IMG/VR virus record: IMGVR_UViG_3300034073_003340
Span: 248,001 to 312,000 of that record
Length of the DNA stretch: 64,000 nt
Direction: 5' to 3' (one strand)
The position numbers were made by a program, and so were the translations under genes. A model generated the notes under the pieces. The model was not told the origin of the DNA. It saw only the letters and a program-made list of their open reading frames with translations, and searched no databases. Positions 3,843 to 64,000 of this stretch are shown one piece after another. Each line of letters starts with the position of its first letter. The stretch's first letter is position 1.

Positions 3843-3931
3843 GTTCGATCTCCTGTTTGCGTTTCCTATGTCACAGTTCTACACTCTGGTGAACAGGAGT
3901 CAACCAGAATCTCACCAGTTTTCAAATTAGA

Positions 3932-13262: not shown

Positions 13263-13808
13263 TTAAGGGATGATTTCCACGAATGCTCGCTTTTTCTTGG
13301 GACCCAGCTCATGACGCCCAAGTTCAAGAGGCTTGTCCCAGCCGTTCTTGCGGGCTTGGCCCACACTAGGGAAGAAGCCCAGGTCCACCATTAAGTGAGC
13401 CATGAGGGTTTTATTCTCAGCGGTCATGGCTGATATGCTGATCTGCTGGGCCTTTTGACGAGGGTTACCATCCTCACTAATGTCCCACCAGCCGAGTTCA
13501 GCACCTCGCTCAATACCCTGGCGATTTTTCTCTTTGATTCCTTCGAACCATTCAGCCTTGGTCTGGCCACCCCAGAACTCAAGATCGTCATCCCTGATGA
13601 TAATGAACGCCCGATCAGCAAATAGGAAGGTACAACGGTTCCCCGGACCAGGATCGTTCACAACGACGCCGTGGACTTCTTCAATTTTGTGAACCTTGGT
13701 CTCGATGAGATGACCCATCACCCAAATTTCTTCTTCCTCCTCACGAATCGTGTGGATTTGATGAAAGCCAGGGCTGATAAATTGTCCAGTGGGAAAGGTT
13801 ACTTTCAT
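13263..13808 (-). CDS. Hypothetical protein with possible C-terminal S4-like RNA-binding segment
   Basis: LMVDLGFFPSVGQARK resembles an S4 helix-turn; early promoter. Confidence 0.5.
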   Translation of the reverse strand: MKVTFPTGQFISPGFHQIHTIREEEEEIWVMGHLIETKVHKIEEVHGVVVNDPGPGNRCTFLFADRAFIIIRDDDLEFWGGQTKAEWFEGIKEKNRQGIERGAELGWWDISEDGNPRQKAQQISISAMTAENKTLMAHLMVDLGFFPSVGQARKNGWDKPLELGRHELGPKKKRAFVEIIP

Positions 13809-14014
13809 TGTGATCTCCTGTGACTTCTATCTCTAGTAAGACAGGTCACAAAGTCAACCTATCTCTTCGATGCTTTTGATCTTGGGTAGATCATACTTTG
13901 TGGAGAGCTGGGACATCAGCTTTCGCTTGGCCTGTGGCTTATTGAACGCGGCAATTTCGCGACTTTCACTACCACGGCTGGTGGAAAATGTGATGAGATA
14001 ACGGTTGATCTTCA

Positions 14015-14308
14015 TCACAGGATCTCCTCAAGCTGCCGCTGGACCAGGATCTTGCCAGCGCGGCGATACTTGCGAATAGCTTCGCGACCGTTCTTCTTAC
14101 CAGGGCACTCGCTCCAAGTATCCAGCTTGAAGCCGCCCTCAGAATCGATCTGCGCCGTCTGGCACTTGTCAGAATGAATAGCGCCGTCGTTTCCACGAAG
14201 AACACGTCCAGCGAAGCGGAGGAAGCGATCGCCATGCTCGCCTTCGGCCAGAGCGCGAGCGCTCCAGCGAGCGTTACGAGGATCAACCTTGCGAACCGTC
14301 TTGCCCAT
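14015..14308 (-). CDS. Hypothetical basic protein
   Basis: Early promoter and AGGAGA RBS. Confidence 0.65.
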   Translation of the reverse strand: MGKTVRKVDPRNARWSARALAEGEHGDRFLRFAGRVLRGNDGAIHSDKCQTAQIDSEGGFKLDTWSECPGKKNGREAIRKYRRAGKILVQRQLEEIL

Positions 14309-14361
14309 TGTCTTCTCCTGTGTTTGCCTACATCACCTGTTTAACAGAAAAGGTGATAATG

Positions 14362-14868
14362 TCAACCAGAAAGACGAGCTATCAAATTGCCTACAGCTTT
14401 TAGATCATCTGTAGTAAGATCGGTTTCCTGTCCCGTCGGCTTCAAACAAATTCTGGTTCGAATATGGGTGTCAGTTTCTTGATACAACTCTCGACCTTGC
14501 GAAATCTGCATATTCTGACTTATTAGGTTCTTTTTGTTGAACCCTGATAAGAAGACATCAAAGTCGCCGGATTTCCTCCAGCGATTCAAGCACGTCTTCC
14601 ATATAAACCCATACAGGCCCAGCCTGCGCCAACTTGGACGGGTATATGCTCCGATGCTGTAGATCTCTCGTTGGGCATAAATGGGAGCATAAAAGAGAAC
14701 TGACATCACCTCGTTGTCGTAGAATAGAGCCGCAAAGTAATAGAGGTTGCTGGCGGGCCATGTAGACGGCATTTTTCTCCGCGCCAATTCTCTGTTATAT
14801 CGAGCAAAAACATCAGCCACGTGTGGATAGTCAGCAATTTGACCAATCCTGAAAACAATCTCTGTCAT
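14362..14868 (-). CDS. GNAT family acetyltransferase
   Basis: YTRPSWRRLGLY (acetyl-CoA motif A), NxxSQ motif B. Confidence 0.7.
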   Translation of the reverse strand: MTEIVFRIGQIADYPHVADVFARYNRELARRKMPSTWPASNLYYFAALFYDNEVMSVLFYAPIYAQREIYSIGAYTRPSWRRLGLYGFIWKTCLNRWRKSGDFDVFLSGFNKKNLISQNMQISQGRELYQETDTHIRTRICLKPTGQETDLTTDDLKAVGNLIARLSG

Positions 14869-15262
14869 GCCCTATTTCTAACATGATTAAACTGGTTGTC
14901 AAATCTTTAGTAACCAAAAAACTCACAAGCTTTGCCAACTTTCATTCTTTGGATCTTTGCTCCAGACGTGTCGGTTAGACGTCGCACGATTGCGGCTTCT
15001 CTAGTCAAAAGAGCGTAGAACCAAATCGAAATTGAACCATAGTCTATCGCGGTTTTTGTTTCGTTGTTATAAATCTTGTAATAACCTATTTCGTTGTGAG
15101 GATTCAATTTCCAGCAAATGCCGTTTATAGAATCCAGATCAATAGCCGTTCCAATAGTCCCAAGTATACCATTTTTGTTTTTGGACAGATGTCGCCATAC
15201 CTTCCTGGTGATCAAATCACCAGGAGACAAAAATATAGTGGTTCTGAAAATGGGGTAGGCTA

Positions 15263-15634
15263 TCAAATCCATGGTTTCAAACTCGAAAGAATTTCTTCTC
15301 GATCTTTGACATTGATGGGACCGATGCCAAGGGCAGTGATCATGGGTCGCGGGAACACGGTGAGTCCAGCATCCTTGACCAAAAAGACTCCACATTTTGG
15401 CTTATAAATTCTGCTGAGACTGTGGAGGATTTCCTCATCTGCCTTCAAGCAAACTTTTGCTACCACGTCGGTATCAAGATATGCTTGAGCCATTGAGGGG
15501 AATCTGACTGTTGAATCAACAAAGGCATGGACGAAAGCATGGCCTATCTGCGCTCCCATCTTTCCTCGGTTTCCTTTGCTCTCCGAGATTGCCTCATTAC
15601 TTACAATGGCATAAAGCTTGATATCAGTCATCAC
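15263..15634 (-). CDS. pth2: Peptidyl-tRNA hydrolase, Pth2 (archaeal/eukaryotic-type) family
   Basis: GKMGAQIGHA, KVCLKA, VKDAGLTVF, TALGIGP. Confidence 0.9.
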   Translation of the reverse strand: MMTDIKLYAIVSNEAISESKGNRGKMGAQIGHAFVHAFVDSTVRFPSMAQAYLDTDVVAKVCLKADEEILHSLSRIYKPKCGVFLVKDAGLTVFPRPMITALGIGPINVKDREEILSSLKPWI

Positions 15635-17238
15635 ATCTCTTCAACTGTTTCAATGCCAAGAAGACCAAGACCGGTTTCCAAATAGGCATGTAGATAATAA
15701 ACAAACCCAACACGGCTCGGGTCAGTGGAAATTTGATACTTTCCATAATAAGCTGAGAACTTCTGAGCAATGGTGTAGAGGTATTCGGCTAATAGGTGAG
15801 GACTCAAACTATCCTCCACACGATTCATCACATCAGAAAAAGCCAGCAGGTCCAGGACTATTTGTCGCTCTTCATCGCAAGTAATCTTGATATTACCAAT
15901 ACCTACCGTCTGCTTATCCAAGATGCTCTTCATCCGAACCAGCTGATAAAGAAGATAAGGTCCAGTTTTACCCTCATGAGCGAGAGCACGATCAATGTCA
16001 TATGCGTAGTCGTTTGACCGCTTGTTTTGTAGGTCATTGAATTTGATAGCAGCAATCGCCACCTTACGAGCAATCTCAGGATCAGGATTTTTAGCTAGAG
16101 CCTTTTCGATTGCTTCATCGAGCAAATCGCGCAGCTTGGGAACACCTCCTGCGCGGGTTCGAAAAGGCTTGCCGTCAAACCCTTGAATAGTTCCAAACCC
16201 CGCGTGGGTGAGCTTCATAGTGTGGCCCATTTGCTTGGCAGCATCAAAGACCTGCCGAAAGTGAAGCCCCTGTCGCTGGTCCACCACGTAGATGATCTCT
16301 GTGGGGTTGGCTTGGGCGCGCTCCTGAATAGTCGCAAGATCAGTAGCAGCGTAAAGGTATCCTCCTTCGCTGTTTGTAAACATAAGCGGAGACAACGCAG
16401 GGTCTTTACAATAAATGACCTCGGCGCCTTCACTTGTCTTTAGAATATCCTTTGCCATCAGTTGTGATTCTAAGACCGGCAAAAGAAGAGCGGTATTGCT
16501 TTCACCATTGTATAGATCAAATTTTATATTGAGGATCTCTAGATCAGCCAAAACGCTCTTTTGTGTTGCTTCAACTATCTTACCCCAGATCTCAAGTAAG
16601 TCTGGATCGCCCAGTTGAAGTCGCCGTGTGAACTTCTGAGCTCCTTTCTTGAACCCTTCGTCGTTCTTGGCCCGATCGGCGGCAAGTGGATAGATCTTCT
16701 GTAGATGCTCAATTGTGTAATTGTTACCATCGGATGCCCGGAAGTCCTCATACATCAGAGCAGCAAGAACTAGACCCATCTGGTAGCCCCAGTCACCCCA
16801 GTGAATGTCGGTGATTACATCGTAGCCTTGATAGACCAGAATCTCCCGAAGACTCTTGCCGATCACCAGACTCCGCAGGTGACCAACATGCATCGCCTTA
16901 GCTACATTGGGGCCACCATAGTCGATAATTTTGAGTTGACCTTTGCGGTTAGTCTTTTGTGGAACTCGCAAGGCAATTTCTAAGATCGCGTTATTGGTGC
17001 GAGCATTGATAAAACCGGGTCCAGCAATGGTGAGGTCGAATCGAGGATCGTCAAATGCGTTGATTATCGTCTGAGCTATATCTCGAGGAGACTTACCCAG
17101 TTGCTTGGCTGACACTAGCGCACCGTTACACTGAAAATCGGCCAAGTCGGGACGGTCACTTCGCGTTACGACGGCGAAATGCTCGGGAATACCTGCGGCT
17201 TGGAAAGCCTTTGCGAGAGAATCAGCAAGAATTTTCAT
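15631..17238 (-). CDS. argS: Arginyl-tRNA synthetase
   Basis: ADFQCNGA, GPGFIN, PNVAKAMHVGHLRS, GDWG, YAATDLA, YVVDQRQ, KPFRTRAG, DALR-like C-terminus. Confidence 0.97.
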   Translation of the reverse strand: MKILADSLAKAFQAAGIPEHFAVVTRSDRPDLADFQCNGALVSAKQLGKSPRDIAQTIINAFDDPRFDLTIAGPGFINARTNNAILEIALRVPQKTNRKGQLKIIDYGGPNVAKAMHVGHLRSLVIGKSLREILVYQGYDVITDIHWGDWGYQMGLVLAALMYEDFRASDGNNYTIEHLQKIYPLAADRAKNDEGFKKGAQKFTRRLQLGDPDLLEIWGKIVEATQKSVLADLEILNIKFDLYNGESNTALLLPVLESQLMAKDILKTSEGAEVIYCKDPALSPLMFTNSEGGYLYAATDLATIQERAQANPTEIIYVVDQRQGLHFRQVFDAAKQMGHTMKLTHAGFGTIQGFDGKPFRTRAGGVPKLRDLLDEAIEKALAKNPDPEIARKVAIAAIKFNDLQNKRSNDYAYDIDRALAHEGKTGPYLLYQLVRMKSILDKQTVGIGNIKITCDEERQIVLDLLAFSDVMNRVEDSLSPHLLAEYLYTIAQKFSAYYGKYQISTDPSRVGFVYYLHAYLETGLGLLGIETVEEM

Positions 17239-21567: not shown

Positions 21568-23142
21568 CTATGAGTCAATATCGTATTGACGTAGCAGGGC
21601 AATTGTATTCTTCAGGCCGTAAGCTTGGGTAAAGGCTCCAAACCTCGGACCGTCACTTGACCCCAAGAGACATTCATAGAGGGCCCGGAACCAAGACCGT
21701 AGAGGTTCAAACCCATGCCGCTTGCCTACTTCATAGACCTGATACTGATAATGCTCTGCTGTCATATTTTCCAGCATACCAGAAAATCGCGCAGCAAGTT
21801 CGTTGAACGCTTGTCGTTCCTTACTTGTTGGCTCACGACGCTCACGATCAAATAGGCCCTTGTCAGCGGCATAGGCAATAACCTTGGGAGCCATCTCCTT
21901 GACATATTGAATTGTAGGTCCCGAAAGCTCGCGACCTTGCTCCAAATAAGCCAGCAACTTGTCGGGCTCTCGAGTTTGGCCCACAATAGCTAGATTCAGC
22001 ATGAGGCTATAGGAAATATCCTCTCCGAGCATTTCCGGATCCTTGATCTGAAAATGCCACGTCGCGTCGTCAGGAGTGATTTCAGCCTTCTGACATAACT
22101 TGATAAACTGATCCTCTAGCTGCGGAACCAAGTCTCTGTAGAGCTTCTTAGCAGCTCGTGGGTTTTGGAACATCAATAACATAAGCGACCCATGTGATCC
22201 ATAGGTCAACCATTCCTCAATAGTGAACCCGTTGCCCTTGCTCTTACTGATCTTGGCTCCGTGCTCATCTAGGAACAACTCATAGGTCAGGTTAAGAGGA
22301 GGAGTGCCGCCGAGGACACGACAGATCTCACTGGAAAGATTGACACTATCCATGAGATCCTTGCCAGACATTTCATAGTCCACGTCAAAAAACGTCCAGC
22401 GCATTGCCCAGTCAACATACCATTGAAGCTTGGCATTGCCATCATGTATATTGCGGAGACCCTCATGGCAGATAATGGTTCCTCGCTCCGCGCCTAGCGT
22501 AACACCGCTGTTGATTACTCGGCCTTGCTCACTCAGCGGCATGAACGGACTATATGTGGATCGACGTTCGTTCTTGAACGTGGGTAGTAGAATATTCAGA
22601 ATGGCCTGATAGTTGTCCCACACGCGATCCAGCATGTCGTTGAAGGCACCGGCCCAGTAGTATTCACTTGAACTCACCATCCCATAGCGAGCTCCCTGAT
22701 GAATGTTGCCAAGTGAGCTACCGTCGAATGATTGAAGAAGAGGCTCAACGAACCTGGCAAGCTTTTCATTGTTGGCTTGCCCAAAGCTAGCCTCTGGGAT
22801 ATCTTCATAGGGATATGGATTAGGGACATGCGTCAGCGGCTTGCCCAGATGCTCGTTCATCCACTCAGGCATATCATCGGGAACCTTACGAAGTGCGTCG
22901 TAATCGTCCGAAAACATAATGAGTCGAGTGCGATAGGCATGATTAGTAAGCTTATTGAAAGCTCGCATCACCCACAAAGTGCGGACAACCTCACCAAAGG
23001 TCCCAATATGTGGCGCCCCTGAGGGACCGTAGCCCGTCTCGAACGTCACCAAATCACCGGGCTTCTTTCCCTTCTTCTCGATATGAGCGAGAAGATTTCG
23101 GGCCTCTTGAAAGGGCCAAGCTCGCGCGTTGGTGACGTTCAT
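21568..23142 (-). CDS. lysS: Class I lysyl-tRNA synthetase
   Basis: AWPFQEA, FETGYGPSGAPHIGTFGE, DYEMSGKDL, KISKSKGN, GPRFG; start reassigned to ATG 23142. Confidence 0.97.
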   Translation of the reverse strand: MNVTNARAWPFQEARNLLAHIEKKGKKPGDLVTFETGYGPSGAPHIGTFGEVVRTLWVMRAFNKLTNHAYRTRLIMFSDDYDALRKVPDDMPEWMNEHLGKPLTHVPNPYPYEDIPEASFGQANNEKLARFVEPLLQSFDGSSLGNIHQGARYGMVSSSEYYWAGAFNDMLDRVWDNYQAILNILLPTFKNERRSTYSPFMPLSEQGRVINSGVTLGAERGTIICHEGLRNIHDGNAKLQWYVDWAMRWTFFDVDYEMSGKDLMDSVNLSSEICRVLGGTPPLNLTYELFLDEHGAKISKSKGNGFTIEEWLTYGSHGSLMLLMFQNPRAAKKLYRDLVPQLEDQFIKLCQKAEITPDDATWHFQIKDPEMLGEDISYSLMLNLAIVGQTREPDKLLAYLEQGRELSGPTIQYVKEMAPKVIAYAADKGLFDRERREPTSKERQAFNELAARFSGMLENMTAEHYQYQVYEVGKRHGFEPLRSWFRALYECLLGSSDGPRFGAFTQAYGLKNTIALLRQYDIDS

Positions 23143-23202
23143 TTTCTTTTCCTCTTGACTTCTCGAGAATACGATACGTGATACCACCGAGAAGTCAATC
23201 AT

Positions 23203-43314: not shown

Positions 43315-43905
43315 TTATCCAAGAAGTGACCTAAAAGTCAAAGAGATTCTCGACTTCGACTGAAAGCCAGCCTTGGGAATCCTGTGCTGATGCGTGGACT
43401 GAAACCCGGCGGGCATCAAGCAAAGCGATCCCTGTTCCAAAGGCTGATCAACAACCGGACCATAGGTCATCTTGCCGTCGACTTCACCTAGTTTTTCGCG
43501 GAACTGAATGCTCCTCGGTTTGCTGGATCCTTCGCCACCATACAGCGTAACAATTGCGATGGGCTTGGTATGATCGATGCCGGGGTCGTCATCTTCATGC
43601 CAACCCAACCAGTCATGAGCACCCTCATATCCGTTGAGGAAACATCCCTCAAAGTCCACAAGCACCGCAGCATGGTTCATGAGAGCCAAGGTACATTCAT
43701 CAATCACATTGTGGGAATCCTGGCTGTGATAGGTCCGGAGACCTGCACCGCGACCATAGGAATAGTCCCGACCAAAGATGTTGGTCCAGTATTCCCTCCG
43801 GGGAGCATCGCTGCGCCGTTCCCAGTTGAGCCCATTCCAGAGCTCATTGAACATCTCGGCCGCTCGTTCGACGCTGACGAAATTAGGAATGTAGATTGCG
43901 CTCAT
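43315..43905 (-). CDS. alkB: AlkB-like 2OG-Fe(II) dioxygenase (ALKBH2/3-type)
   Basis: CFLNGY, LGWHEDD, HQHRIPK, RISLTFR. Confidence 0.9.
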   Translation of the reverse strand: MSAIYIPNFVSVERAAEMFNELWNGLNWERRSDAPRREYWTNIFGRDYSYGRGAGLRTYHSQDSHNVIDECTLALMNHAAVLVDFEGCFLNGYEGAHDWLGWHEDDDPGIDHTKPIAIVTLYGGEGSSKPRSIQFREKLGEVDGKMTYGPVVDQPLEQGSLCLMPAGFQSTHQHRIPKAGFQSKSRISLTFRSLLG

Positions 43906-44006: not shown

Positions 44007-44099
44007 TGGTGGAAGTGCCCGGACTTGAACCGGGATCGTCGCCTAATCTGGGCTTTCGCGAGGTATAAGCTCACCCGCTCTACCTTGAGCTACACTTCC
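44007..44099 (-). tRNA. tRNA-Ile(UAU) with long variable arm
   Basis: GGAAGTG/CACTTCC-ACCA; GTGAG-CTTATAC-CTCGC; GCC/GGC variable stem; 93 nt. Confidence 0.8.
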
Positions 44100-45257: not shown

Positions 45258-45333
45258 TGGTGGCCCATATGGGACTCGAACCCACAACCGACAGATTTTA
45301 GAGATCCCTGCTCTACCATTGAGCTAAAAGGCC
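45258..45333 (-). tRNA. Amber suppressor tRNA (CUA)
   Basis: 76-nt cloverleaf; loop CT-CTA-AA; CCA encoded; one mismatch each in the acceptor and anticodon stems. Confidence 0.8.
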
Positions 45334-51649: not shown

Positions 51650-52505
51650 ATGAAAGGTTGAGAATACACCTTTTACAAAACGTCTTCGAGCATTATCCCT
51701 GGCTTCTGACCAGTTTTCTCTCGATTTCCACTAAGCGTAGCCGAAGCAGTCACTTAGTAACGTTCCAAAGCCGCCAACTTATAGACCGCTGGCATTAGCG
51801 GTGTCCTTACGGGCCTTTCGGTAGTGTCTAGTTACGCCTGGAATCGCTTCCAGTTAAGCGGCCGCTAAGCCACAACATACCCTCTTCTACCAACACTAGT
51901 AGACGTTTGCCCCTACCAGTGTCCCTGTTAGCTTGCGCCCAGGGAATTAGGCTTTTTCAGCCTCGTAAGCGAGTCAGGCTTTCATTTTTTGACAGCTATG
52001 TCTAAAACAGCTATGTTTAACCCATTGCGATGTGCTGACTCAGTAGCTTCAAAGGCTTTTGACCTCCAAAATACTACACACCACGTATCTTTCGCCTTGC
52101 GGGGCTACTTGATCAGTTTTCAAGAACTGTAACACACGGCTGAACCCGTATATTCCAATCCTATCAACTTGCCACTTGCCCTTGGCGCGACCCTCGGACT
52201 GTAGTGACTATCTCTTCCCACTTGGTACTGACCATATTTCGCTGGCGACGTTGGGGTGCGAAACCCATTATCGAGCCATCCGTTGGACCACTCGACGTAT
52301 ACCGCTTTCGCGGAACAGTCATCCTATGGCGTCCTACCTATCTCCGCAACCCGTAAAGGCCCGAAGAGCTATCTTTTGGATAGCAGGGTGAGACTTGCTT
52401 GTTATTGACCTATATTGCTATAGGCGAGACCTATTGGGTTTCAGCCCCTTTCCCTAAGTTGCCCCAGGTTATCTGCTACAAGCAGCAATCTCTAATCTCT
52501 TGAGC
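51650..52505 (-). ncRNA. Large structured ncRNA, GOLLD-like
   Basis: ~855 nt without a credible ORF, between a TTGACA-N17-TACTTT promoter and a terminator at 51620-51649; many GNRA-capped hairpins; GTGGTGTGTAGTATT..CAAAAG and GTGTATTCTCAACC segments recall GOLLD. Confidence 0.7.
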
Positions 52506-57096: not shown

Positions 57097-57810
57097 TTAG
57101 TCGTCCGACTTGATTCCCACAAAACGTAGGATAAAGAGGAACATATTCAGGAAGTCGAGGTAGAGGTTCAAGGCCCCCATGACCACGATGCGACCCTGTG
57201 TGTCACCGCTCATGCTGGGATCGTAGGCGTCCTTGAGACTCTGCGTATCCCAGGCAGTCAGACCAGCGAAGATCAAAATACCCGCAATACCAATGAACAG
57301 ATTCAAGCCGCTGCTGGGAATGAAAATATTCAAGATCATGAGAGCAATCAGACCAAACAAAGCAAATACCAGAAATGCTCCAATTGGTCCTAGATCACGC
57401 TTGGTGGTGTAGCCGTAGAGGCTACACCCTGCAAAGCCAACCGCACTAGCAAGAAAAGCCATGAGGATAGATCCTCCTGTGTATCGGCTCAAAATCACCG
57501 AAAGTCCCAACCCTTCGAGGACCACAAAGGTCCAATACAAAGTGTGGAGAGTTGTCAGCTTCATGCGCTCAACACCCAGACTCATCGCCAGCACAAGACC
57601 CAACGGGGACAATGCCACCAGCCAGAACAGGAGACCACCCTGCTTTAAAATCTCCAACATGCCACTCGCAGTAGCAAACCATGCTGCGCCTGCGCTGACC
57701 AAGAGACCCATAAGCATCATGTTATAGATGCCCGTCATATAGTTGCGAAGTCCCTGGTCATAGGACACGCTTCGTGAAATTTCCATGTGATCATTCTCCC
57801 TAGGGTTCAC
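57097..57810 (-). CDS. Bax inhibitor-1/YccA family membrane protein
   Basis: DQGLRNYM, YGYTTKRDL, AGLTAWDTQ, GALNLYLDFLNMFLFILR. Confidence 0.93.
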   Translation of the reverse strand: MNPRENDHMEISRSVSYDQGLRNYMTGIYNMMLMGLLVSAGAAWFATASGMLEILKQGGLLFWLVALSPLGLVLAMSLGVERMKLTTLHTLYWTFVVLEGLGLSVILSRYTGGSILMAFLASAVGFAGCSLYGYTTKRDLGPIGAFLVFALFGLIALMILNIFIPSSGLNLFIGIAGILIFAGLTAWDTQSLKDAYDPSMSGDTQGRIVVMGALNLYLDFLNMFLFILRFVGIKSDD

Positions 57811-57846: not shown

Positions 57847-59043
57847 TTACTTGATGAGACTCTGAATCTCCATGAGCAGGAGAGCTGGCGTAATCTCTTC
57901 AGCATGTTGTTTTCCTAGGCGTCGTAATGAAACCACGCCTTTTTCAACATCACGTTGACCAATCACTACGATCCAGTTGCGCTTCATCTCACTATGTTCT
58001 TTTATCTTTTGTTTTAGATTCTCATCTCGGTCGTCGTAAATCACGCGAGCACCTTGGACCTGTGCCAAATCTCTAAAGGCCTCTGATGCTTTTTCTCCGC
58101 CTGGTAACGGTATCACCACTACATTCTCAGGTGAAAGCCAGAACGGCAGATTGCCTTCATAGTTTTCAAGCAATATACCAATAAAGCGTTCAAAAGAGCC
58201 GAGAATAGCGCGATGTAACATAACAGGTCGCTGACGACTACCATCTGCGGCCACATATTCAGCCTCTAGGCGTTCTGGTAATACCATATCCAATTGGATC
58301 GTGCCGCATTGCCATTGACGTCCTTTGAGATCCTTGAGAGCAAATTCTAGTTTGGGACCGTAGAATGCCCCTTCGCCTTTCTGAATGACAAAGTCCAGGC
58401 CAGCAGCTTTGACAGCTTCTGAAAGATCGTGCTCTGCTTTGTTCCAGTCTTCTTCGGAACCAGCTCGCACCGCTGGGCGGGTCGATAGGCCGACCACAAC
58501 ATCAGAGAACCCAAAGTCATTATACACCTCCTTTAGCAAGAGGATGAAAGACTTTACCTCATCAACTACCTGCTCAGGCGCGCAAAATATATGCGCATCG
58601 TCTTGCGTAAACTGTCGAACTCTCATGATTCCATGTAGAGCGCCACTTGGTTCACTGCGATGACAACAGCCAAACTCTGCCAAGCGAATTGGAAGTTGTC
58701 TATATGAAACTACACCACTGTTGAATATCTGGACATGACCAGGACAGTTCATTGGCTTAATCGCAAACTGCCTTTGGTCATCATCTAGAACATACATATG
58801 ATCTTGGAACTTCTCCCAATGACCAGACTTCTCCCATAGGGATTTATCAACCAGCTGCGGCGTCTTGACCTCTTGGTAGCCATCACGTCTGAGTTTTGAT
58901 CGTATATACTCTTCAATAATCCTGAAGAGTTCATAGCCCCGAGGATGCCAAAATACTGACCCCGCGGCATCATCCTGGAGATGAAAAAGTTTGAGGTCAC
59001 GACCAAGACGACGATGGTCGGAATTAGAAAGTTGAATATCCAT
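57847..59043 (-). CDS. thrS: Threonyl-tRNA synthetase lacking N-terminal TGS/editing domains
   Basis: DHRRLG, KPMNCPGH, MRVRQFTQDDAH, GAFYGPK, QCGTIQLD, HRAILGSFERF; 398 aa. Confidence 0.97.
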   Translation of the reverse strand: MDIQLSNSDHRRLGRDLKLFHLQDDAAGSVFWHPRGYELFRIIEEYIRSKLRRDGYQEVKTPQLVDKSLWEKSGHWEKFQDHMYVLDDDQRQFAIKPMNCPGHVQIFNSGVVSYRQLPIRLAEFGCCHRSEPSGALHGIMRVRQFTQDDAHIFCAPEQVVDEVKSFILLLKEVYNDFGFSDVVVGLSTRPAVRAGSEEDWNKAEHDLSEAVKAAGLDFVIQKGEGAFYGPKLEFALKDLKGRQWQCGTIQLDMVLPERLEAEYVAADGSRQRPVMLHRAILGSFERFIGILLENYEGNLPFWLSPENVVVIPLPGGEKASEAFRDLAQVQGARVIYDDRDENLKQKIKEHSEMKRNWIVVIGQRDVEKGVVSLRRLGKQHAEEITPALLLMEIQSLIK

Positions 59044-59929
59044 AAAACACCACTAGAATTTGAAACAAGGAAATAATCACAAAAGCCAAGGGTTATCAGT
59101 CCTTGGCGGTGGTAGTCGATGTTTCTGTGGTGATTGGATTAGCTTGAACTAGCTTTTTGAGATGGTTGATGATAACACCGTCCATACTACCAATGCGGCC
59201 CAAAGCGCGATATTCGTCGAACTTGCTATCAAGCCACGACTGAACTTCGGCATCAGTAAGAGGAAAGGCGAGGGTGTTACGCATCGTGACCTATTTATAA
59301 CTTATTAAGGCCAAGGACAAGAATAAAAATCCAACTAGCATAGATCCAGTTGTTCCATTTGATTCTCTGTTGGATTTTGTGCCAATCTCTTAGAGAGTTT
59401 TGACATCGAGTAGCATGGTCTGGATTAGGCCCAGTGACCACATTTAGCTTACCGTTTTTGTCCACCCAGCAACGGAAACTTGGTCTTCCAAAATGTTTAC
59501 GAGAATTCCAGATACGTGCGTTTTGGGCGTCTCTATCCGTCACTATGTTGGCTATAATTCGCAAAGTAAAATAGGCTATCAACCAGATGGCACTACATTG
59601 CCACATCACTTCTATGGTGGCATTCTCAAACCACAAAATCCCCCAGATCAGAGGAAGAAAGAGTATACCGCCCATTAGTTCAGACGCCGCGCGGCTGTTT
59701 CACAGGCAGAAACCACCTCATCGTTATTGTAACCTGGACGGTTGCTTGCTCGTTCCAAACAAGCCAGGAATAACTCTCGACGCGCAACATCTTTTCTAGC
59801 CCGTTGAACAGCGGTTTCAGGGCTAACAGGGCTACAGGCCGAAATCAAGCCAATACAGCAAGCGATGTGAATAGCAGTTTTCATTGCCTATACCTACATG
59901 ATAGAGGCAAACTTTACAATAATGAAAGT

Positions 59930-60065
59930 TGCGACGGGCAAAGTGGCGTCTATGGGGGTTGCCTGTTGCTCTACCAACTGAGCTATTTTGCCGTTTTAGC
60001 AGCAAAAGTAGGATTCGAACCTACGGCCTTCTGGTTTGATAATCCACAAACTACGGCCCGTCGCA
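59930..60065 (-). ncRNA. Circularly permuted tRNA mimic, YrlA/Y RNA-like (copy 1)
   Basis: Terminal stem GCGACGGGC/GCCCGTCGC; T arm precedes a loop-closed acceptor stem, then the D arm AGCTCAGTTGGTAGAGC. Confidence 0.8.
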
Positions 60066-60102
60066 TCTTCGTTATGGCGTAATTACGCCATAGGATCAAG
60101 TA

Positions 60103-60282
60103 TCAAATACCTGCGCTTCTTAGAAGACCAGAATGCTGTAGAAAATATAGCAAAGCTACCAATGCCACAATCACCTTGAGAATCTGATTAAGAGGTCTCG
60201 GAAGCGTCATCATGTCAATTACTAGGATGATGACATAGACGATGAGAGCTAGGAATAGCAGACTGATTAGAGCTGATACCAT
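60103..60282 (-). CDS. Small 2-TM membrane protein
   Basis: AGGAGA RBS; two hydrophobic helices separated by LPRP. Confidence 0.65.
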   Translation of the reverse strand: MVSALISLLFLALIVYVIILVIDMMTLPRPLNQILKVIVALVALLYFLQHSGLLRSAGI

Positions 60283-60344
60283 GAGTATTCTCCTTAGTTG
60301 GTATGAAACCATTATACTAAGGGGAATACTCAGAGTCACTAACT

Positions 60345-60421
60345 TGGTGGGCATAGTGGGATTCGAACCCACACTGTGAGGATTTTAAGTCCCCTGACTC
60401 TACCGATTGGCCTATATGCCC
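60345..60421 (-). tRNA. tRNA-Leu(UAA) with short variable loop
   Basis: GGGGA-CTTAAAA-TCCTC; 77 nt; CCA encoded. Confidence 0.85.
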
Positions 60422-60466
60422 AACGCCAAACTCTCTTATAGCGTAAAAGAGCTTGGATCAACTATT

Positions 60467-60979
60467 TTAGTTATCAGATTCAGATTCGTCCACAGCTTTC
60501 TGGATAATGTCACACAAGAGCTGATTGAATGTGATATCACGTTCATGCGCCAACTTAAACAAAACCAAGAGCTGATCATCGTCCAAATCCAGAGGGATAA
60601 TAACCCTTGGATCGAATTTTTCGTTTGCCAGCATCGCGACACCTTTTTCCAAGATGTCATCGACTACTTCTAGATCAATGTAGTCAAGACCCTCATATGC
60701 TTCACTGCGATTGACTCCACGCTTGGTAGCTTCTGCCATAATGGCATCGCGGTAATCAGGATTGATCCAACGATAAGCTGCCTGCTCGTTCGCATCCAGA
60801 CCACTAGCAACTGTGATCTCGATCACGGTCTGGTCTTCGCGCTTGAACGCAACACTCATTGTGGCGAATTCGTTATCACATCCAAGGACCTGTGCGCCTT
60901 CATATGAAGACCACTGGTGCTCCCATGCGTCGTTGATACGATACTGGATTGCGTCTAAAAACTGTTGGAGAATGTTCAT
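60467..60979 (-). CDS. Hypothetical protein, possible C-terminal RHH
   Basis: LFKLAHERDITFNQLL. Confidence 0.55.
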   Translation of the reverse strand: MNILQQFLDAIQYRINDAWEHQWSSYEGAQVLGCDNEFATMSVAFKREDQTVIEITVASGLDANEQAAYRWINPDYRDAIMAEATKRGVNRSEAYEGLDYIDLEVVDDILEKGVAMLANEKFDPRVIIPLDLDDDQLLVLFKLAHERDITFNQLLCDIIQKAVDESESDN

Positions 60980-61017
60980 GTTAGATCTCACATCTGGGGG
61001 TTCCGATCTAATCATCT

Positions 61018-61938
61018 CTAGATAGTAGGATCATCACCTGGTGTCAATCTACTTTCTGCATAAGCTATATACTGTGGATCAATATCAAATCCCACCCACT
61101 TCAAGCCCATTTCTTTGGCGGCAACCGCACTTGTGCCAGTGCCCATAAAGGGATCAAGTAAGGTTCCAGATGCGCCACTGAACTTGATAGCTCGTCTCGC
61201 TAGTTCAATAGGAAAGGTAGCAGGATGAGTGCCCCTTTGTATGTTGCGATCCACAATCGTGTCATAAGGTATATACCAAGTATTTCCAGGGCAATGGACG
61301 TCCTCTACGGGTCCATGACTAGAGATCTTTAGTGCGAGCGCGTCTTCGAGTTGTTGGCGCTCTATAGGGCTCGCTGAAGCATCAAAGGCCTTTTTGTTGG
61401 CGTAGCCCATCTTCTTAATCAATTTACCACGCCAACGACTTGTCTTGTCCAAGTTACCTTTGTCGGCATACGGCACACCAATGGCATTCTTGTCACAGGG
61501 AACTGTACCAGTCTTGGTAAAATGGAAAAGATGTTCCCAAGTGGGGTTGGCAAATCTTTTGCTGTTGATTGGCTTATAGTGACCAATTTGCTGATCATCT
61601 ATCGCAATACTCTTGACCCAGGTGAAATTGTTCTGGAGGATCATGTATTGACGAGCTACATTGGCGACATCCATTCCAACCCAAGGATCTACATTGCTAT
61701 AACCCATATTGAGAAAGAAGTGACCATTGGGTTTTAAGACTCGATTGATTTGGTCAAACACATCAGACAACCAGTTGAGATATTCATCTCTGGGCTTACT
61801 GTCCTTGTATTCTCCATATTTGATATCAAGATTGTAAGGCGGACTAGTGATACAGATATCAATGCTCTCACATTCCAGAGCTTTCATTCCATCAACGCAA
61901 TCTTGTAATTTGATAGTCATATCGTACTTATTAGGCAC
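61018..61938 (-). CDS. DNA methyltransferase, N4-C/N6-A beta class
   Basis: ITSPPYN, HPATFP, LLDPFMGTGTS. Confidence 0.93.
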   Translation of the reverse strand: MPNKYDMTIKLQDCVDGMKALECESIDICITSPPYNLDIKYGEYKDSKPRDEYLNWLSDVFDQINRVLKPNGHFFLNMGYSNVDPWVGMDVANVARQYMILQNNFTWVKSIAIDDQQIGHYKPINSKRFANPTWEHLFHFTKTGTVPCDKNAIGVPYADKGNLDKTSRWRGKLIKKMGYANKKAFDASASPIERQQLEDALALKISSHGPVEDVHCPGNTWYIPYDTIVDRNIQRGTHPATFPIELARRAIKFSGASGTLLDPFMGTGTSAVAAKEMGLKWVGFDIDPQYIAYAESRLTPGDDPTI

Positions 61939-62378
61939 GATATATCTTTTCTATCACCCAAGACGAATCCCCGGCTAGTTGCCTAGCCGGGGATTGATGT
62001 CAAATGCTAGACTTGTCTCGATTTGCTTCCATGGCAATTCGTTCAGCTTCGGCCTGCGCTTTGCGCTCTGCCTTTGTTGGAACAGCCGTCATAGCTTTGA
62101 TGTAACCGGCCTGTTCCTCGGCACCCATACGAGATAACACATCTTCTCGAATGAATTCAAACCGACTAATTTCTGTGCTTTCTGCGTTATGACCCCGGAG
62201 ACTTCGTAGTCGCATATCAATCAACTGGAGATACTTCTGGTTTTCCGTGAGGATGATCTTATCGTCGGCCATGCTTGTTCCTTTTGCTCTAGTGAGAACA
62301 CCAGTAGAGCAAGGCAACGCAGGTAACAATATCTTTTTTGCTCAAAAGAAAACCCCCGGCCTTTGAGACCGGGGGTTT

Positions 62379-62464
62379 TGGCGGAAAGCTAGAGACTCGA
62401 ACTCTACCCCTTGCGGAGCACATTCCTTAGCAGGGAAGTCCAGACCCTGTCTGGTTAACTTTCC
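62379..62464 (-). tRNA. tRNA-Ser(GCU), extended D stem
   Basis: CT-GCT-AA loop; CCAGAC-AGG-GTCTGG D arm; long variable arm. Confidence 0.85.
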
Positions 62465-62483
62465 GTAATGCTGACTAACAGCT

Positions 62484-62569
62484 TGGCGGATAGCGAGGGA
62501 CTCGAACTCTACCCCTTGCGGAGCCAATCGCTTTCCAGGCGATGCCACACCCTGTGTGGTTCACTATCC
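62484..62569 (-). tRNA. tRNA-Ser(GGA), extended D stem, mismatched T stem
   Basis: ATCGC-CTGGAAA-GCGAT; CCACAC-AGG-GTGTGG D arm. Confidence 0.82.
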
Positions 62570-62570
62570 G

Positions 62571-62659
62571 TGGAGGAAGACTAGGGACTTGAACCCTACA
62601 CCCATAAGGGTGCCCACTGGTTTCGAATCAGGTCCGGGGCCCTCCCCGGTTAATCTTCC
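62571..62659 (-). tRNA. tRNA-Ser(CGA), extended D stem
   Basis: TT-CGA-AA loop; CCGGGG-AGGG-CCCCGG D arm; CCA encoded. Confidence 0.8.
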
Positions 62660-62668
62660 ATGGTATTT

Positions 62669-62816
62669 AGTTGAGGGCAAGTATCCGTATGGCATCTTTC
62701 CGTTGCGTTTGCCAATTCCGCCACTTCCCGTCACAGAGTCGGGAAGCCAGGACTCGAACCTGGAAGACTAAAAGTCCACAGTTTTCTTTGATAAGCCAAA
62801 CAATCGGCCCTCAACT
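62669..62816 (-). ncRNA. Circularly permuted tRNA mimic, YrlA/Y RNA-like (copy 2)
   Basis: AGTTGAGGGC/GCCCTCAACT stem; CCAGGTTCGAGTCCTGG, CTTCCCG-loop-CGGGAAG, Leu-like D arm TGGCGGAATTGGCAAACGC. Confidence 0.8.
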
Positions 62817-62819
62817 TTG

Positions 62820-62892
62820 CGACCTATAGGGGAATCGAACCCCTCAAATTCCGCTAGACAGGCGGTTCTCTTTCCCAGCTGAGTCATAGGCC
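62820..62892 (-). tRNA. tRNA-Asp(GUC), CCA not encoded
   Basis: CCGC-CTGTCTA-GCGG; GGCCTAT/ATAGGTC-G. Confidence 0.8.
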
Positions 62893-63135
62893 ATATGACA
62901 CATTTTATGATGTGTAGCTATCAACAATCTTAGCAATTGCTCGATGTCTTTGTCTATATTCTTTTGCCGAAGCATTGGCTTCAAAATCCGTTGAATGGTA
63001 GGTTCCCATAACCAAGGTCCTACAATCCTCGCTGATCATAAACCATCGGAAGCGCCCACAAGGCTGAAGCAACACTTCGATCATTTTTCACCAATAATAT
63101 GAGTGGATTATGCTCATATTTACCTGGTGTTAGTT

Positions 63136-63274
63136 TCAACGGGCAAGTTGCGAAAAGGATGTTTTTCGGTGTCCTAACCACTAGACGAACCCCGCATAAT
63201 ATAGAGCGGGGTATGGGATTCGAACCCATGTAACCGGCGTGATAAGCGATAACCCTTATCAGTCGGCCCGTTGA
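63136..63274 (-). ncRNA. Circularly permuted tRNA mimic, YrlA/Y RNA-like (copy 3)
   Basis: TCAACGGGC/GCCCGTTGA stem; ATGGGTTCGAATCCCAT, ACCCCGC-loop-GCGGGGT, Glu-like D arm TCGTCTAGTGGTTAGGAC. Confidence 0.8.
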
Positions 63275-63682
63275 TTATTTTGGATTGCGCATCATATCCA
63301 CTGCGCCGTCAACCTCATCTAAAACCTCGAAGCCATGCTTTTTATACCAAGCCACCAAAGCTTCAGTCGAGGTATCAGCATAACCATCGGCACTGAGTTT
63401 GATAGTCACGCCATGCTTGTCGGCGAGATCGCATATGGCGCGCAAAGCTTGGGTTCCGGAACCGGAGCCTGAGCCCTGTATATCACTTAAACGAATAGAG
63501 CTATTTCCTTGACCTCGGACTTCCACCTTGGCTGATCCAATAAGTCTCTGACGATGATTGAATGGACTCTCTTGTGAGATGCTATCAAGTTCATCAAGCA
63601 ACCTCTGAGTGGGAGAATCAGGATCAGGAGTGGTCTTCCCCAATTTTATGGTTAGCTCATTTGTGATTTCATTCCAGCGCAT
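63275..63682 (-). CDS. GNAT acetyltransferase with MRWxEI leader (possible virion protein)
   Basis: GSGSGTQALRAICDLADKHGVTIKLSA, LVAWYKKHGF; TAAATA just upstream. Confidence 0.75.
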   Translation of the reverse strand: MRWNEITNELTIKLGKTTPDPDSPTQRLLDELDSISQESPFNHRQRLIGSAKVEVRGQGNSSIRLSDIQGSGSGSGTQALRAICDLADKHGVTIKLSADGYADTSTEALVAWYKKHGFEVLDEVDGAVDMMRNPK

Positions 63683-63693
63683 GTTGTATTTAT

Positions 63694-63764
63694 TGGCGCT
63701 CCGAGTAGGATTCGAACCTACAATAGCAGTCTTAGGAGGACCGCTCCCATCCATTGGCCGGAGC
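63694..63764 (-). tRNA. tRNA-Arg(CCU), compact atypical cloverleaf
   Basis: 71 nt; CT-CCT-AA loop in a 6-7-bp stem; minimal D arm; CCA encoded. Confidence 0.7.
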
Positions 63765-63947
63765 ATCTTTCCAAGTCAACTTAAACAACATAGCGTCTTT
63801 GGGATCCACAAAGCTGAAGCCTCGACGATGATCATCTGTGTAAAGCTTATAGGTAAAATACTTGATCTTGCGCTCTTCCAGCCAGTTGATCAATATCATC
63901 CATATGGGAGGATCCGCATATGTGTCCAACACATCTATTTCCAACAT
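63732..63947 (-). CDS. Short protein of the FxDxxxAMxFKLxW family
   Basis: FVDPKDAMLFKLTW; C-terminus reads into the tRNA-Arg gene. Confidence 0.55.
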   Translation of the reverse strand: MLEIDVLDTYADPPIWMILINWLEERKIKYFTYKLYTDDHRRGFSFVDPKDAMLFKLTWKDAPANGWERSS

Positions 63948-64000
63948 AAAGGTGACCTGTAGTTTTTCCGCAAGATCACCTAGATTGGCACGATTGCGAT

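What the first reader, a model, noticed from the sequence alone, without database searches (positions are those of the whole stretch)
59930..63274. Three circularly permuted tRNA mimics (Y RNA/YrlA-like), each built on a different tRNA isotype, inside the tRNA cluster
Seen: at 59930-60065, 62669-62816 and 63136-63274 (minus strand) the T arm comes before the D arm. The acceptor stem is closed by an 8-9-nt loop with no CCA, and the anticodon arm is replaced by a long terminal stem. All three share 5' GGGCCG...TTATC and 3' ACTT(T)GCCC. Their tRNA modules differ: a Phe/Lys/Thr-type D arm, a Leu-type D arm with a variable-arm-like hairpin, and a Glu/Asp-type D arm. Established: this is the architecture of bacterial and phage YrlA Y RNAs, which bind Ro60/Rsr and are often linked to RtcB. 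Inference: the phage carries a diversified panel of anticodon-less tRNA-elbow mimics on a common protein-binding scaffold, possibly decoys or adaptors for tRNA-targeting defence or repair enzymes. No Ro60/TROVE gene lies in this window.
Basis: partly seen in the sequence, partly recalled or inferred. Interest (0 to 1): 0.85.

Follow-up and report, generated by a model that had tools for sequence, protein, structure and literature searches.

The report
Phage Y RNAs that mimic tRNAs
The three elements are real, conserved small-RNA genes of the known Y RNA (YrlA) kind, part of a set of at least eight in a 436-kb phage that carries its own Ro60 gene far away on the same genome; this is a new example of a known system, not a new kind of element.

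Summary
All three minus-strand elements have the same order: a 10-bp terminal stem, a second stem, invariant UUAUC, a T arm, a 7-8-bp closed acceptor-like hairpin and a D arm.

A covariance model built only from phage RNAs next to Ro60 genes finds them over its full length (85, 75 and 53 bits). Across 136 distinct relatives, 31 of 32 base pairs show compensatory changes, and the tRNA 15:48 tertiary pair covaries.

The same sequence signature lies beside a same-strand Ro60 gene in 50 IMG/VR phage loci and 52 bacterial loci. The model also finds the Ro60-adjacent RNA of mycobacteriophage I3, whose phage group has published YrlA RNAs.

The window has no Ro60, but its 435,856-bp contig does (TROVE plus vWA_Ro60 domains). 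That gene lies at least 125 kb from the RNAs, on the same strand. Relatives, including the cultured Sinorhizobium phage Phosso, share this split layout.

Five more Y-like genes lie just upstream of the window, among more than 55 tRNA genes.

The Rfam YrlA model misses all of them at its threshold. Expression, Ro60 binding and the role of the different tRNA-like heads are untested.

Verdict: new member of a known kind, moderate interest.

The parts
59930..60065 (-). E1: complete Y RNA (YrlA-type) gene, 136 nt
   Evidence: Model R1, trained only on Ro60-adjacent RNAs: 85.1 bits, E=2.6e-15, full model length. Rfam sbRNA RF01656 36.1 bits over the full length; YrlA RF02553 30 bits over the T/acceptor/D part. 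Folding z-score -4.65.
60056..60065 (-). E1 terminal stem P1, 5' strand. It pairs with 59930-59939 and is followed by the invariant C and G of GGGCCG.
   Evidence: Read from the sequence. P1 covaries: all 10 pairs show compensatory changes in A6. C11 and G12 are invariant in 136 of 136.
60044..60052 (-). E1 second stem P2, 5' strand (pairs with 59947-59955). The invariant UUAUC follows at 60038-60042.
   Evidence: A P2 helix of 6-11 bp is present in all 30 sequences examined. Helix 2 of A6 is 95.4% paired, with compensatory changes in 5 of 5 pairs. UUAUC is 91-100% conserved.
59968..60024 (-). E1 tRNA-like module: T arm 60008-60024, acceptor-like hairpin 59986-60007 (7 bp, loop GCUAAAAC), D arm 59968-59983
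   Evidence: U8, A14, G18G19 and G15:C48 read directly from the sequence (for E1).
62669..62816 (-). E2: complete Y RNA (YrlA-type) gene, 148 nt, with a class-II-tRNA-like head
   Evidence: R1 53.4 bits, E=6.5e-9, full model length. Rfam YrlA 17 bits. Orthologue in L022 at 83% identity. Starts 2 nt after the tRNA-Asp-like gene at 62819-62892.
62705..62777 (-). E2 tRNA-like module: variable-arm-like hairpin 62765-62777, T arm 62747-62763, acceptor-like hairpin 62724-62746 (loop ACUCUGUGA), D arm 62705-62721
   Evidence: A15:U48 read by eye in place of G15:C48, the same swap that covaries across the family.
63135..63275 (-). E3: complete Y RNA (YrlA-type) gene, about 140 nt. It begins immediately after the stop codon of ORF 63275-63682.
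   Evidence: R1 75.3 bits, E=2.4e-13. Orthologues at 95% (L022), 81% (L020) and 79% (L007) identity. 77% identical to an unannotated element in Sinorhizobium phage Phosso.
63171..63229 (-). E3 tRNA-like module: T arm 63213-63229, acceptor-like hairpin 63189-63212 (loop UCUAUAUUAU), D arm 63171-63186

Best explanation
E1, E2 and E3 are genes for Y RNAs of the bacterial/phage YrlA class. The two ends of each RNA pair into a bipartite stem. This stem carries the Ro60-recognition motif: an invariant GCCG on the 5' strand, a CUUGCCC-type 3' strand, and probably a bulged C. It is followed by an invariant UUAUC.

The rest of each RNA folds into a tRNA-shaped head made of a T arm, a closed 7-bp acceptor-like stem and a D arm, with tRNA tertiary contacts preserved and no anticodon arm.

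The three belong to a conserved set of at least eight Y RNA genes scattered through the tRNA island of a 436-kb phage: five with full heads, one with a partial head, and two that are stem only.

Inferred: most are co-transcribed with the tRNAs they abut and are released by the tRNA-processing enzymes. They then bind the phage's own Ro60 protein, which is encoded at least 125 kb away. By analogy with Deinococcus, Salmonella and Thermus phage phiLo, the RNP probably recruits the host exonuclease PNPase or other RNA-handling proteins for RNA surveillance or decay during infection. The different tRNA-like heads would act as alternative adaptors or gates.
For: Shown here:

1. Anatomy and non-random occurrence.

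2. Model R1, built only from 17 phage RNAs lying next to Ro60 genes, scores E1 at 85.1, E3 at 75.3 and E2 at 53.4 bits over its full length. Ordinary tRNAs score 33 bits or less, and only partially.

3. The same signature lies beside a Ro60 gene (TROVE plus vWA_Ro60) in 50 IMG/VR loci. It is on the Ro60 strand in 60 of 60 RNA-gene pairs, and upstream of the gene in 51 of them. In 78 Ro60-centred loci, all 65 model hits lie on the Ro60 strand. In bacterial genomes, 52 of 120 pattern loci hold Ro60, and 72 of 72 pattern matches are on its strand.

4. R1 finds an RNA directly upstream of the Ro60 gene of mycobacteriophage I3 at 98.9 bits. Chen et al. 2014 (PMC4201824) reported YrlA in mycobacteriophages that encode Ro60.

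5. Covariation. In an independent MAFFT alignment, 22 of 27 RNAalifold pairs are compensatory. In 136 distinct sequences, 92.9% of cells are paired against 61% in shuffles and 33-45% in slid controls, and 31 of 32 pairs show compensatory changes. The tertiary 15:48 pair is G:C in 68 and A:U in 35, against 5 mixed cases.

6. The contig encodes Ro60 (579 aa): TROVE 1.7e-40, vWA_Ro60 1.1e-52, and PDB 2NVO (Rsr) 2.7e-118.

7. Each paralogue is closer to its orthologue in related phages (0.75-0.95 identity) than to its paralogues in the same genome (0.57-0.76).

8. Most of the eight genes abut tRNA genes by 0-9 nt.

From the literature: a phage Ro60 binds phage-encoded Y-like RNAs and host PNPase in vitro (PMC12135203). 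YrlA heads are modified by tRNA enzymes, and a 7-bp acceptor-like stem is cut by RNase P (PMC4201824).
Against: - No expression or binding data. The one RNA-labelled run gave only short tRNA-like fragments from other organisms.
- The Rfam YrlA model scores only 30 and 17 bits against a threshold of 69.
- The exact GNCGAA motif is not present in E1-E3, which read GCCGUA, GCCGAU and GCCGAC. It is exact in only 41 of 139 family members.
- The genes are not next to Ro60, unlike the defining arrangement in Chen et al. 2014.
- The PNPase partnership and the role of the different heads are pure inference.
- The covariation statistics are not corrected for phylogeny, and alignment A6 is fitted to the model.
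Confidence: 0.85

Rival explanations
1. Ro60-independent tRNA decoys or sponges. The tRNA-shaped heads would soak up host tRNA-targeting defence nucleases, toxins or tRNA-modifying enzymes and so protect the phage's large tRNA set. The stem would only stabilise the RNA.
For: The genes are embedded in a tRNA island with more than 55 tRNAs and several aminoacyl-tRNA synthetase genes. The tRNA tertiary fold is under selection. They are unlinked from Ro60 in this genome. The heads are diverse and conserved as separate paralogues.
Against: There is no anticodon loop, which to my knowledge is the usual target of known anticodon nucleases. The most conserved unpaired bases are in the stem region (GCCG, UUAUC), not the head. 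Two of the eight genes have no head at all. The family is tightly linked to Ro60 elsewhere, and every related huge phage checked keeps a Ro60 gene.
Confidence: 0.08
2. True circularly permuted or split tRNA genes. Processing would yield a chargeable tRNA-like molecule, for example by RNase P cleavage in the acceptor loop followed by trimming to a CCA end.
For: The 3'-acceptor strand is followed by CCA after the discriminator base in 26 of 136 family members, against 2.3% expected, and by CUA, CUC or CUU in 29 more. The acceptor-like stems are 7 bp, the length at which M. smegmatis YrlA is cut by RNase P and receives CCA in vivo (PMC4201824).
Against: There is no anticodon stem-loop. That position is occupied by the conserved open-ended P2/P1 stem. 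E1-E3 have lost the CCA. They score below the tRNA threshold: 19.5 bits against 29 for E1. To my knowledge, bacteria lack the splicing endonuclease used for permuted tRNAs in algae and archaea.
Confidence: 0.04
3. Cis-acting processing or punctuation signals of the tRNA operons, with no function as free RNAs.
For: Several copies abut tRNA genes by 0-9 nt.
Against: Phosso copies have their own promoter-like and terminator-like signals. The sequence and structure extend well beyond what a processing site needs. There is Ro60 linkage.
Confidence: 0.03

Closest known systems
YrlA Y RNAs of bacteria and mycobacteriophages (Chen et al. 2014, PMC4201824; Rfam RF02553)
   Same: The module order is the same: a stem formed by the two ends with a GNCG(AA)-type motif, YUAY (here UUAUC), a variable region, a T arm, a closed acceptor-like stem and a D arm. 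The Levitt pair covaries. My model also finds the Ro60-adjacent RNA of mycobacteriophage I3 at 98.9 bits. Several Y RNAs per locus is common, up to 5 in L180.
   Different: Here the genes lie at least 125 kb from Ro60 instead of within about 4 kb. There are at least eight per genome, and they are interleaved with tRNA genes. The Rfam model scores far below threshold, as it also does for the mycobacteriophage RNA (36 bits). E1-E3 carry GCCGUA, GCCGAU and GCCGAC rather than GNCGAA.
Thermus phage phiLo Ro60 with Yrl1 and Yrl2 (PMC12135203, 2025)
   Same: A phage-encoded Ro60 with phage-encoded Y-like RNAs. It is shown biochemically to bind them and to assemble with host PNPase. This is the mechanism proposed here by analogy.
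   Different: The phiLo RNAs lie directly upstream of Ro60 and are described as stem-bulge-stem RNAs with a CGAA motif. The terms 'tRNA-like' and 'YrlA' do not occur in that paper's text.
Metazoan Y RNAs and nematode stem-bulge RNAs (Rfam RF01656)
   Same: E1 aligns over the whole RF01656 model at 36.1 bits against a threshold of 38. It shares the CGG(G/U)CCG 5' strand, the UUAUC after the second stem and the CUUG(A/C)CC 3' strand.
   Different: It is below the family threshold. The eukaryotic RNAs have a loop domain rather than a tRNA-like head.
Permuted tRNA genes of Cyanidioschyzon and some archaea
   Same: The T-arm half precedes the D-arm half, and the acceptor ends are joined by a short linker, often after an encoded CCA.
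   Different: There is no anticodon arm. The termini form a conserved protein-binding stem rather than a splicing motif. This comparison rests on my own knowledge of those genes.

Membership tests
YrlA-class Y RNA (Chen et al. 2014) | The 5' and 3' ends pair into a stem that carries a GNCGAAN0-1G-type Ro60 motif near the 5' end | tested here: inconclusive
   The stem criterion is met: P1 has 10 bp, all with compensatory changes. GNCG is present in 135 of 139 family members, and C11 and G12 are invariant. The full GNCGAA motif is present in only 41 of 139 and in none of E1-E3, which read GCCGUA, GCCGAU and GCCGAC.
YrlA-class Y RNA (Chen et al. 2014) | A tRNA-like domain in the order V region, T arm, closed acceptor-like stem-loop, D arm, with YUAY before the V region | tested here: met
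   UUAUC is 91-100% conserved. The T stem, acceptor-like stem and D stem all covary.
YrlA-class Y RNA (Chen et al. 2014) | tRNA tertiary contacts can form, including a covarying Levitt pair (G15:C48 or A15:U48) | tested here: met
   G:C in 68, A:U in 35, G:U in 1 and A:C in 4. Fisher p about 1e-22, not corrected for phylogeny. U8 and A14 are each present in 116 of 124. E1 is G:C in that analysis; E3 (G:C) and E2 (A:U) were read by eye.
YrlA-class Y RNA (Chen et al. 2014) | Encoded within about 4 kb of a Ro60 gene and on the same strand | tested here: not met
   In this genome Ro60 is at contig position about 13,344-15,080 and the RNAs are at 307,930-324,572. They share a strand but are 125 kb (circular) or 293 kb (linear) apart. 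No model hit lies within 8 kb of Ro60. The criterion is met by other members of the same model family.
YrlA-class Y RNA (Chen et al. 2014) | The genome encodes a Ro60 orthologue | tested here: met
   L204 8001-9737: TROVE and vWA_Ro60 domains; Rsr structure 2NVO at E=2.7e-118.
YrlA-class Y RNA (Chen et al. 2014) | Recognised by a covariance model trained on Ro60-adjacent RNAs | tested here: met
   R1: 85.1, 75.3 and 53.4 bits, with E-values from 2.6e-15 to 6.5e-9.
YrlA-class Y RNA (Chen et al. 2014) | The RNA is bound by Ro60 in vivo or in vitro | not testable with these tools
   This needs RIP, EMSA or a pull-down.
Rfam RF02553 YrlA | Reaches the curated gathering score (69 bits) | tested here: not met
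   E1 scores 30 bits (model positions 27-81 only), E2 17 bits, and E3 has no hit. The model also fails on the mycobacteriophage I3 RNA (36 bits) and on 14 Ro60-adjacent IMG/VR loci. The Rfam model therefore does not cover these phage RNAs.
Rfam RF01656 nematode sbRNA (Y RNA homologues) | Reaches the gathering score (38 bits) | tested here: not met
   E1 scores 36.1 bits, E=7.4e-5, over the full model. E2 and E3 have no hit.
tRNA (RF00005) / permuted tRNA gene | A cloverleaf with an anticodon arm, or halves that rebuild one after permutation | tested here: not met
   E1 scores 19.5 bits against a threshold of 29. The anticodon-arm position is occupied by the open P2/P1 stem.

The most novel reading that the evidence does not exclude
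The conserved set of at least eight Y RNAs, each with a different tRNA-shaped head, would be an adaptor kit. One phage Ro60, with host PNPase, could then be directed to different tRNA-handling enzymes or tRNA species, giving the phage its own quality control or turnover of the tRNA pool. A bolder variant: the heads are cut by RNase P and end in CCA, giving two-piece molecules that can be charged or that bind synthetases. This would link Ro60 to the phage's own aminoacyl-tRNA synthetases.
Probability: 0.12. Interest if true: 0.75.

Novelty: new member of a known kind. Interest (0 to 1): 0.42.

Why it matters
Y RNA/Ro60 particles are conserved from bacteria to humans, yet their job in phages is unknown. 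This work adds three things.

- **Scale and layout.** A clade of 400-kb-class phages keeps a Ro60 gene and a conserved multi-gene family of Y RNAs inside its tRNA island. The two are more than 100 kb apart, so searches that look only next to Ro60 miss them.
- **A gap in Rfam.** The YrlA model does not detect these phage Y RNAs at its threshold. In two cultured phages the RNAs are missing from the annotation: they are annotated as protein-coding genes in mycobacteriophage I3 and left unannotated in Phosso.
- **An experimental system.** Sinorhizobium phage Phosso has the same split layout and can be grown.

The encoded-CCA relics and the covarying 15:48 pair also support an origin of the heads from head-to-tail tRNA genes.

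Tried and rejected
- **Rfam at gathering thresholds.** No YrlA hit. Only the E-value scan gave sub-threshold hits.
- **A second ORF cluster next to the RNAs (20 loci, no Pfam domain).** It is the antisense shadow ORF of the Ro60 gene, an artefact.
- **Alignment-based search for Ro60 loci in IMG/VR.** A single-protein search with the Ro60 of a sister-sample contig found it.
- **Walking the contig with the look-up of encoding contigs.** This gave 20 kb more sequence and five more Y RNA genes, but no Ro60.
- **Isotype assignment.** Aligning the two halves of each head to the phage's 55 tRNAs gave only weak, ambiguous best matches: E1 to Phe/Thr/Arg, E2 to Leu/Pro, E3 to Gln/Gly/Glu. No element is a recent copy of a phage tRNA.
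- **Reads and contigs of public runs.** The phage occurs in subsurface, soil, wastewater and freshwater DNA runs. The single RNA-labelled run gave only short tRNA-like fragments, so there is no expression evidence either way.
- **tblastn with two other Ro60 queries.** The Phosso hit was not among the rows shown. The window phage's own Ro60 as query put it first.
- **Pairing of the stem bases next to the bulged C.** The model-fitted alignment is too gappy there to score it.
- **A fourth GCCG...TTATC match at 4573-4596.** It lies inside an ORF and has no T arm, so I treat it as chance.


Full report
**1. The observation**

The minus strand of 59400-64000 holds three elements with the same order of parts:
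- a 5' strand ending in GGGCCG;
- a second helix;
- UUAUC;
- in E2, an extra hairpin;
- a T arm with GGUUCGA(A/G)UCC;
- a 7-bp acceptor-like stem closed by an 8-10-nt loop;
- a D arm;
- a 3' strand reading ACUU(U)GCCC plus the complement of the first bases.

The combined pattern GCCG-N9-13-TTATC-N12-40-GGTTCGANTCC occurs three times in the window. It was never found in 100 shuffles. Minimum-energy folds recover the terminal stem, T arm, acceptor-like stem and D arm for E1 and E3, with z-scores of -4.65 and -4.47; the fold of E2 (z -2.56) keeps the terminal stem, the variable-arm hairpin and the acceptor-like stem. ARAGORN and the Rfam tRNA model do not call them tRNAs.

**2. Where the window comes from**

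A protein look-up places the window on a 435,856-bp metagenome contig, JGI 3300034073 Ga0310130_0000004, also held as IMGVR_UViG_3300034073_003340. The window covers contig positions 248001-312000.

The window itself encodes:
- arginyl-tRNA synthetase, class I lysyl-tRNA synthetase and a class II tRNA synthetase;
- a GOLLD RNA;
- several tRNAs.

Together with the 18.8 kb upstream of it, the region holds 55 ARAGORN tRNA calls. This is a huge phage with a large translation-related island.

**3. The family and its link to Ro60**

Many lie on contigs of 100-480 kb, often with two to four copies side by side.

I clustered all ORFs of 200 aa or more in the flanks. One family dominates: it is present in 50 loci and carries the TROVE and Ro60-vWA domains. 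It is on the same strand as the RNA in 60 of 60 RNA-gene pairs. In 51 of those pairs the RNA lies upstream, 28 to about 2,100 nt away. A second cluster turned out to be the antisense shadow ORF of the same gene.

From the protein side, 78 Ro60-centred IMG/VR loci gave 65 model hits. All are on the Ro60 strand, with up to five per locus.

In bacterial genomes the same pattern gave 120 stretches. Of these, 52 contain Ro60, and 72 of 72 pattern matches are on its strand, at a median distance of 393 nt.

No other protein family, RtcB included, recurs in the phage flanks.

**4. Membership test by a model that never saw the window**

I built covariance model R1 from 17 RNAs that lie next to Ro60 genes (A5). 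Its scores are:
- E1 85.1 bits (E=2.6e-15), E3 75.3 bits and E2 53.4 bits (E=6.5e-9), each over the full model;
- three unannotated elements of Sinorhizobium phage Phosso at 62-73 bits;
- the window's true tRNAs at 33 bits or less, over the T-arm part only.

R1 also scores an RNA directly upstream of the Ro60 gene of mycobacteriophage I3 at 98.9 bits. Chen et al. 2014 (PMC4201824) reported YrlA RNAs in mycobacteriophages that encode Ro60.

The Rfam YrlA model is a poor yardstick for these phages:
- 30 bits on E1 and 17 on E2, against a gathering score of 69;
- only 36 bits on the mycobacteriophage RNA;
- no threshold hit in 14 Ro60-adjacent IMG/VR loci.

E1 also aligns end to end with the nematode stem-bulge RNA family, which to my knowledge comprises Y RNA homologues. 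It scores 36.1 bits against a threshold of 38 and shares the CGG(G/U)CCG, UUAUC and CUUG(A/C)CC blocks.

**5. Structure under selection**

- In a MAFFT alignment of 30 sequences, RNAalifold predicts the terminal stem, T stem, 8-bp acceptor-like stem and D stem. Of its 27 pairs, 22 show compensatory changes.
- A second stem of 6-11 bp exists in each of the 30 sequences.
- In 136 distinct model-aligned sequences, 92.9% of cells are paired. Shuffles give 61% and slid controls give 33-45%. Compensatory changes occur in 31 of 32 pairs. This alignment is fitted to the model, and nothing here is corrected for phylogeny.
- The tRNA Levitt pair covaries: G15:C48 in 68, A15:U48 in 35, and mixed in 5. 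U8 and A14 are each present in 116 of 124. E1 is G:C in that analysis; by eye E3 is also G:C and E2 is A:U.
- The invariant unpaired bases are C11 and G12 of GCCG and the UUAUC.

**6. A relic of CCA**

In the model alignment, the loop that closes the acceptor-like stem begins with CCA in 26 of 136 members, against 2.3% expected from base composition. It begins with CUA, CUC or CUU in 29 more. E1, E2 and E3 read CUA, CUC and CUA, while their nearest orthologues read CCA. This fits heads that derive from tRNA genes with an encoded CCA, joined 3' end to 5' end.

**7.

Upstream of the window on the same contig, the model finds:
- two further full-length genes, at L199 6179-6319 and 7458-7589;
- one with a T arm and acceptor-like stem but no D arm, at L002 1666-1785;
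- two stem-only genes of about 70 nt, at L002 1865-1934 and 6190-6266.

That makes eight genes within about 17 kb of tRNA island. Most abut tRNA genes by 0-9 nt. E2 starts 2 nt after a tRNA-Asp-like gene, and E3 starts right after a stop codon.

Each of the five full-length paralogues has a closer orthologue in related huge phages (0.75-0.95 identity) than any paralogue in its own genome (0.57-0.76). The set therefore predates the divergence of these phages.

None of the heads closely matches one of the phage's own tRNAs. 'Different heads' is solid; the named isotypes are not.

**8. Ro60 in this genome**

No Ro60 lies in the window or in the 18.8 kb upstream of it.

A search with the Ro60 of a sister-sample contig found an orthologue at 92% identity on the window's own contig. 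It is at position about 13,344-15,080, on the same strand as the RNAs. It has TROVE and vWA_Ro60 domains and matches Deinococcus Rsr, human Ro60 and Xenopus Ro60 structures. It follows a tail-sheath gene, with no RNA-repair gene beside it and no Y RNA within 8 kb.

The distance to the Y RNA genes is 293 kb along the contig, or 125 kb if the genome is circular.

The same split layout holds in four related contigs of 296-465 kb and in contig 3300044641_007115. It also holds in the cultured phage Phosso. There an annotated Ro-like protein at 290,295-291,959 is the best match to the window phage's Ro60 in the phage collection (49.8% identity). Phosso's three Y RNA genes lie at 18-30 kb, and two of them have their own promoter-like and terminator-like signals.

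**9. How it most likely works**

- Shown: these are conserved, structured RNA genes of the Ro60-associated YrlA class, in a genome that encodes Ro60.
- Established elsewhere: Ro60 binds the stem of Y RNAs, and bacterial Y RNAs tether Ro60 to PNPase. YrlA heads are handled by tRNA enzymes (TruB, DusA), and RNase P cuts the one with a 7-bp acceptor-like stem (PMC4201824). A Thermus phage Ro60 binds two phage Y-like RNAs and host PNPase in vitro (PMC12135203). A subset of jumbo phages carries TROVE proteins (PMC7824862).
- Inferred: the RNAs are released from tRNA-containing transcripts by the tRNA-processing enzymes. They load onto the phage Ro60 and adapt or gate it, the different heads giving different partners.

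The rival readings are less likely for the reasons listed under each: Ro60-independent decoys, true permuted tRNAs and cis-acting processing signals.

**10. Expression**

The phage is present in DNA runs labelled subsurface, soil, wastewater and freshwater metagenome. The only RNA-labelled run gave short fragments that match tRNA-like parts and probably come from other organisms. Expression is untested.

**11. Verdict**

It is a new member of a known kind. Three features are notable:
- the genes are unlinked from Ro60;
- they form a conserved eight-gene family in a tRNA island;
- the Rfam YrlA model misses them, and the two cultured-phage records examined do not annotate them.

Noticed in passing
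window 51655-52084 (-): A full-length GOLLD RNA (RF02032) at 164 bits against a gathering score of 150, lying in the same translation-related region of the phage.
   Followed up: no
window 62380-62660 (-): Three tandem tRNA-Ser-like genes with unusually long 6-7-bp D stems and long variable arms. One (62575-62659) scores 37.8 bits on the tRNA-Sec model (threshold 47). ARAGORN calls only the middle one, as Ser(GGA). By eye the anticodons look like CGA, GGA and GCU. Their shape recalls tRNA-Sec or 'allo-tRNAs'.
   Followed up: partly
window 45258-45333 (-): A tRNA with anticodon CUA, labelled 'Pyl' by ARAGORN, at 54 bits on the tRNA model. It is a candidate amber suppressor, which would fit stop-codon recoding in this phage.
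   Followed up: no
window 44007-44099 (-): tRNA-Ile(UAU) with an insertion of about 20 nt in the variable region.
   Followed up: no
window 15631-17238, 21568-23202, 57847-59043 (all -): Phage-encoded arginyl-tRNA synthetase, class I lysyl-tRNA synthetase and a class II synthetase with an HGTP anticodon-binding domain. A 150-aa class II synthetase-like fragment lies just upstream of the window (L002 2223-2675).
   Followed up: partly
L199 6179-6319 and 7458-7589; L002 1666-1785, 1865-1934 and 6190-6266 (same contig, upstream of the window): Five more Y RNA-like genes: two with full heads, one without a D arm, and two stem-only of about 70 nt. ARAGORN miscalls part of one as tRNA-His (L199 7456-7532).
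   Followed up: yes
L250 3683-3830 and 3861-3934 (Mycobacterium phage I3, NC_067270): The Y RNAs upstream of the Ro60 gene largely coincide with two annotated 'hypothetical protein' CDSs (locus 3544-3780 and 3785-3958), which are probably mis-annotations.
   Followed up: partly
L001 5755-5896, 5994-6133 and 11026-11166 (Sinorhizobium phage Phosso, PV764938): Three unannotated Y RNA genes in a cultured 469-kb phage. The two tandem copies each have TTGAC-type promoter-like boxes and a terminator-like hairpin. The phage's Ro-like gene lies about 200 kb away.
   Followed up: yes
window 63697-63764 (-): A sub-threshold tRNA-like sequence (27.5 bits against 29) overlaps the 5' end of the listed ORF 63275-63766. 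The real ORF probably starts at the ATG at 63682.
   Followed up: partly
window 60074-60091 (-): A perfect 8-bp hairpin (ATGGCGTAATTACGCCAT) lies a few bases upstream of E1, with no U-tract after it. It may be a processing or stabilising signal.
   Followed up: no
window 43315-43905 (-), 9873-10907 (-), 57097-57810 (-): An AlkB-like 2OG-Fe(II) oxygenase, an NAD synthase and a Bax1-inhibitor-family membrane protein are encoded in the window.
   Followed up: no
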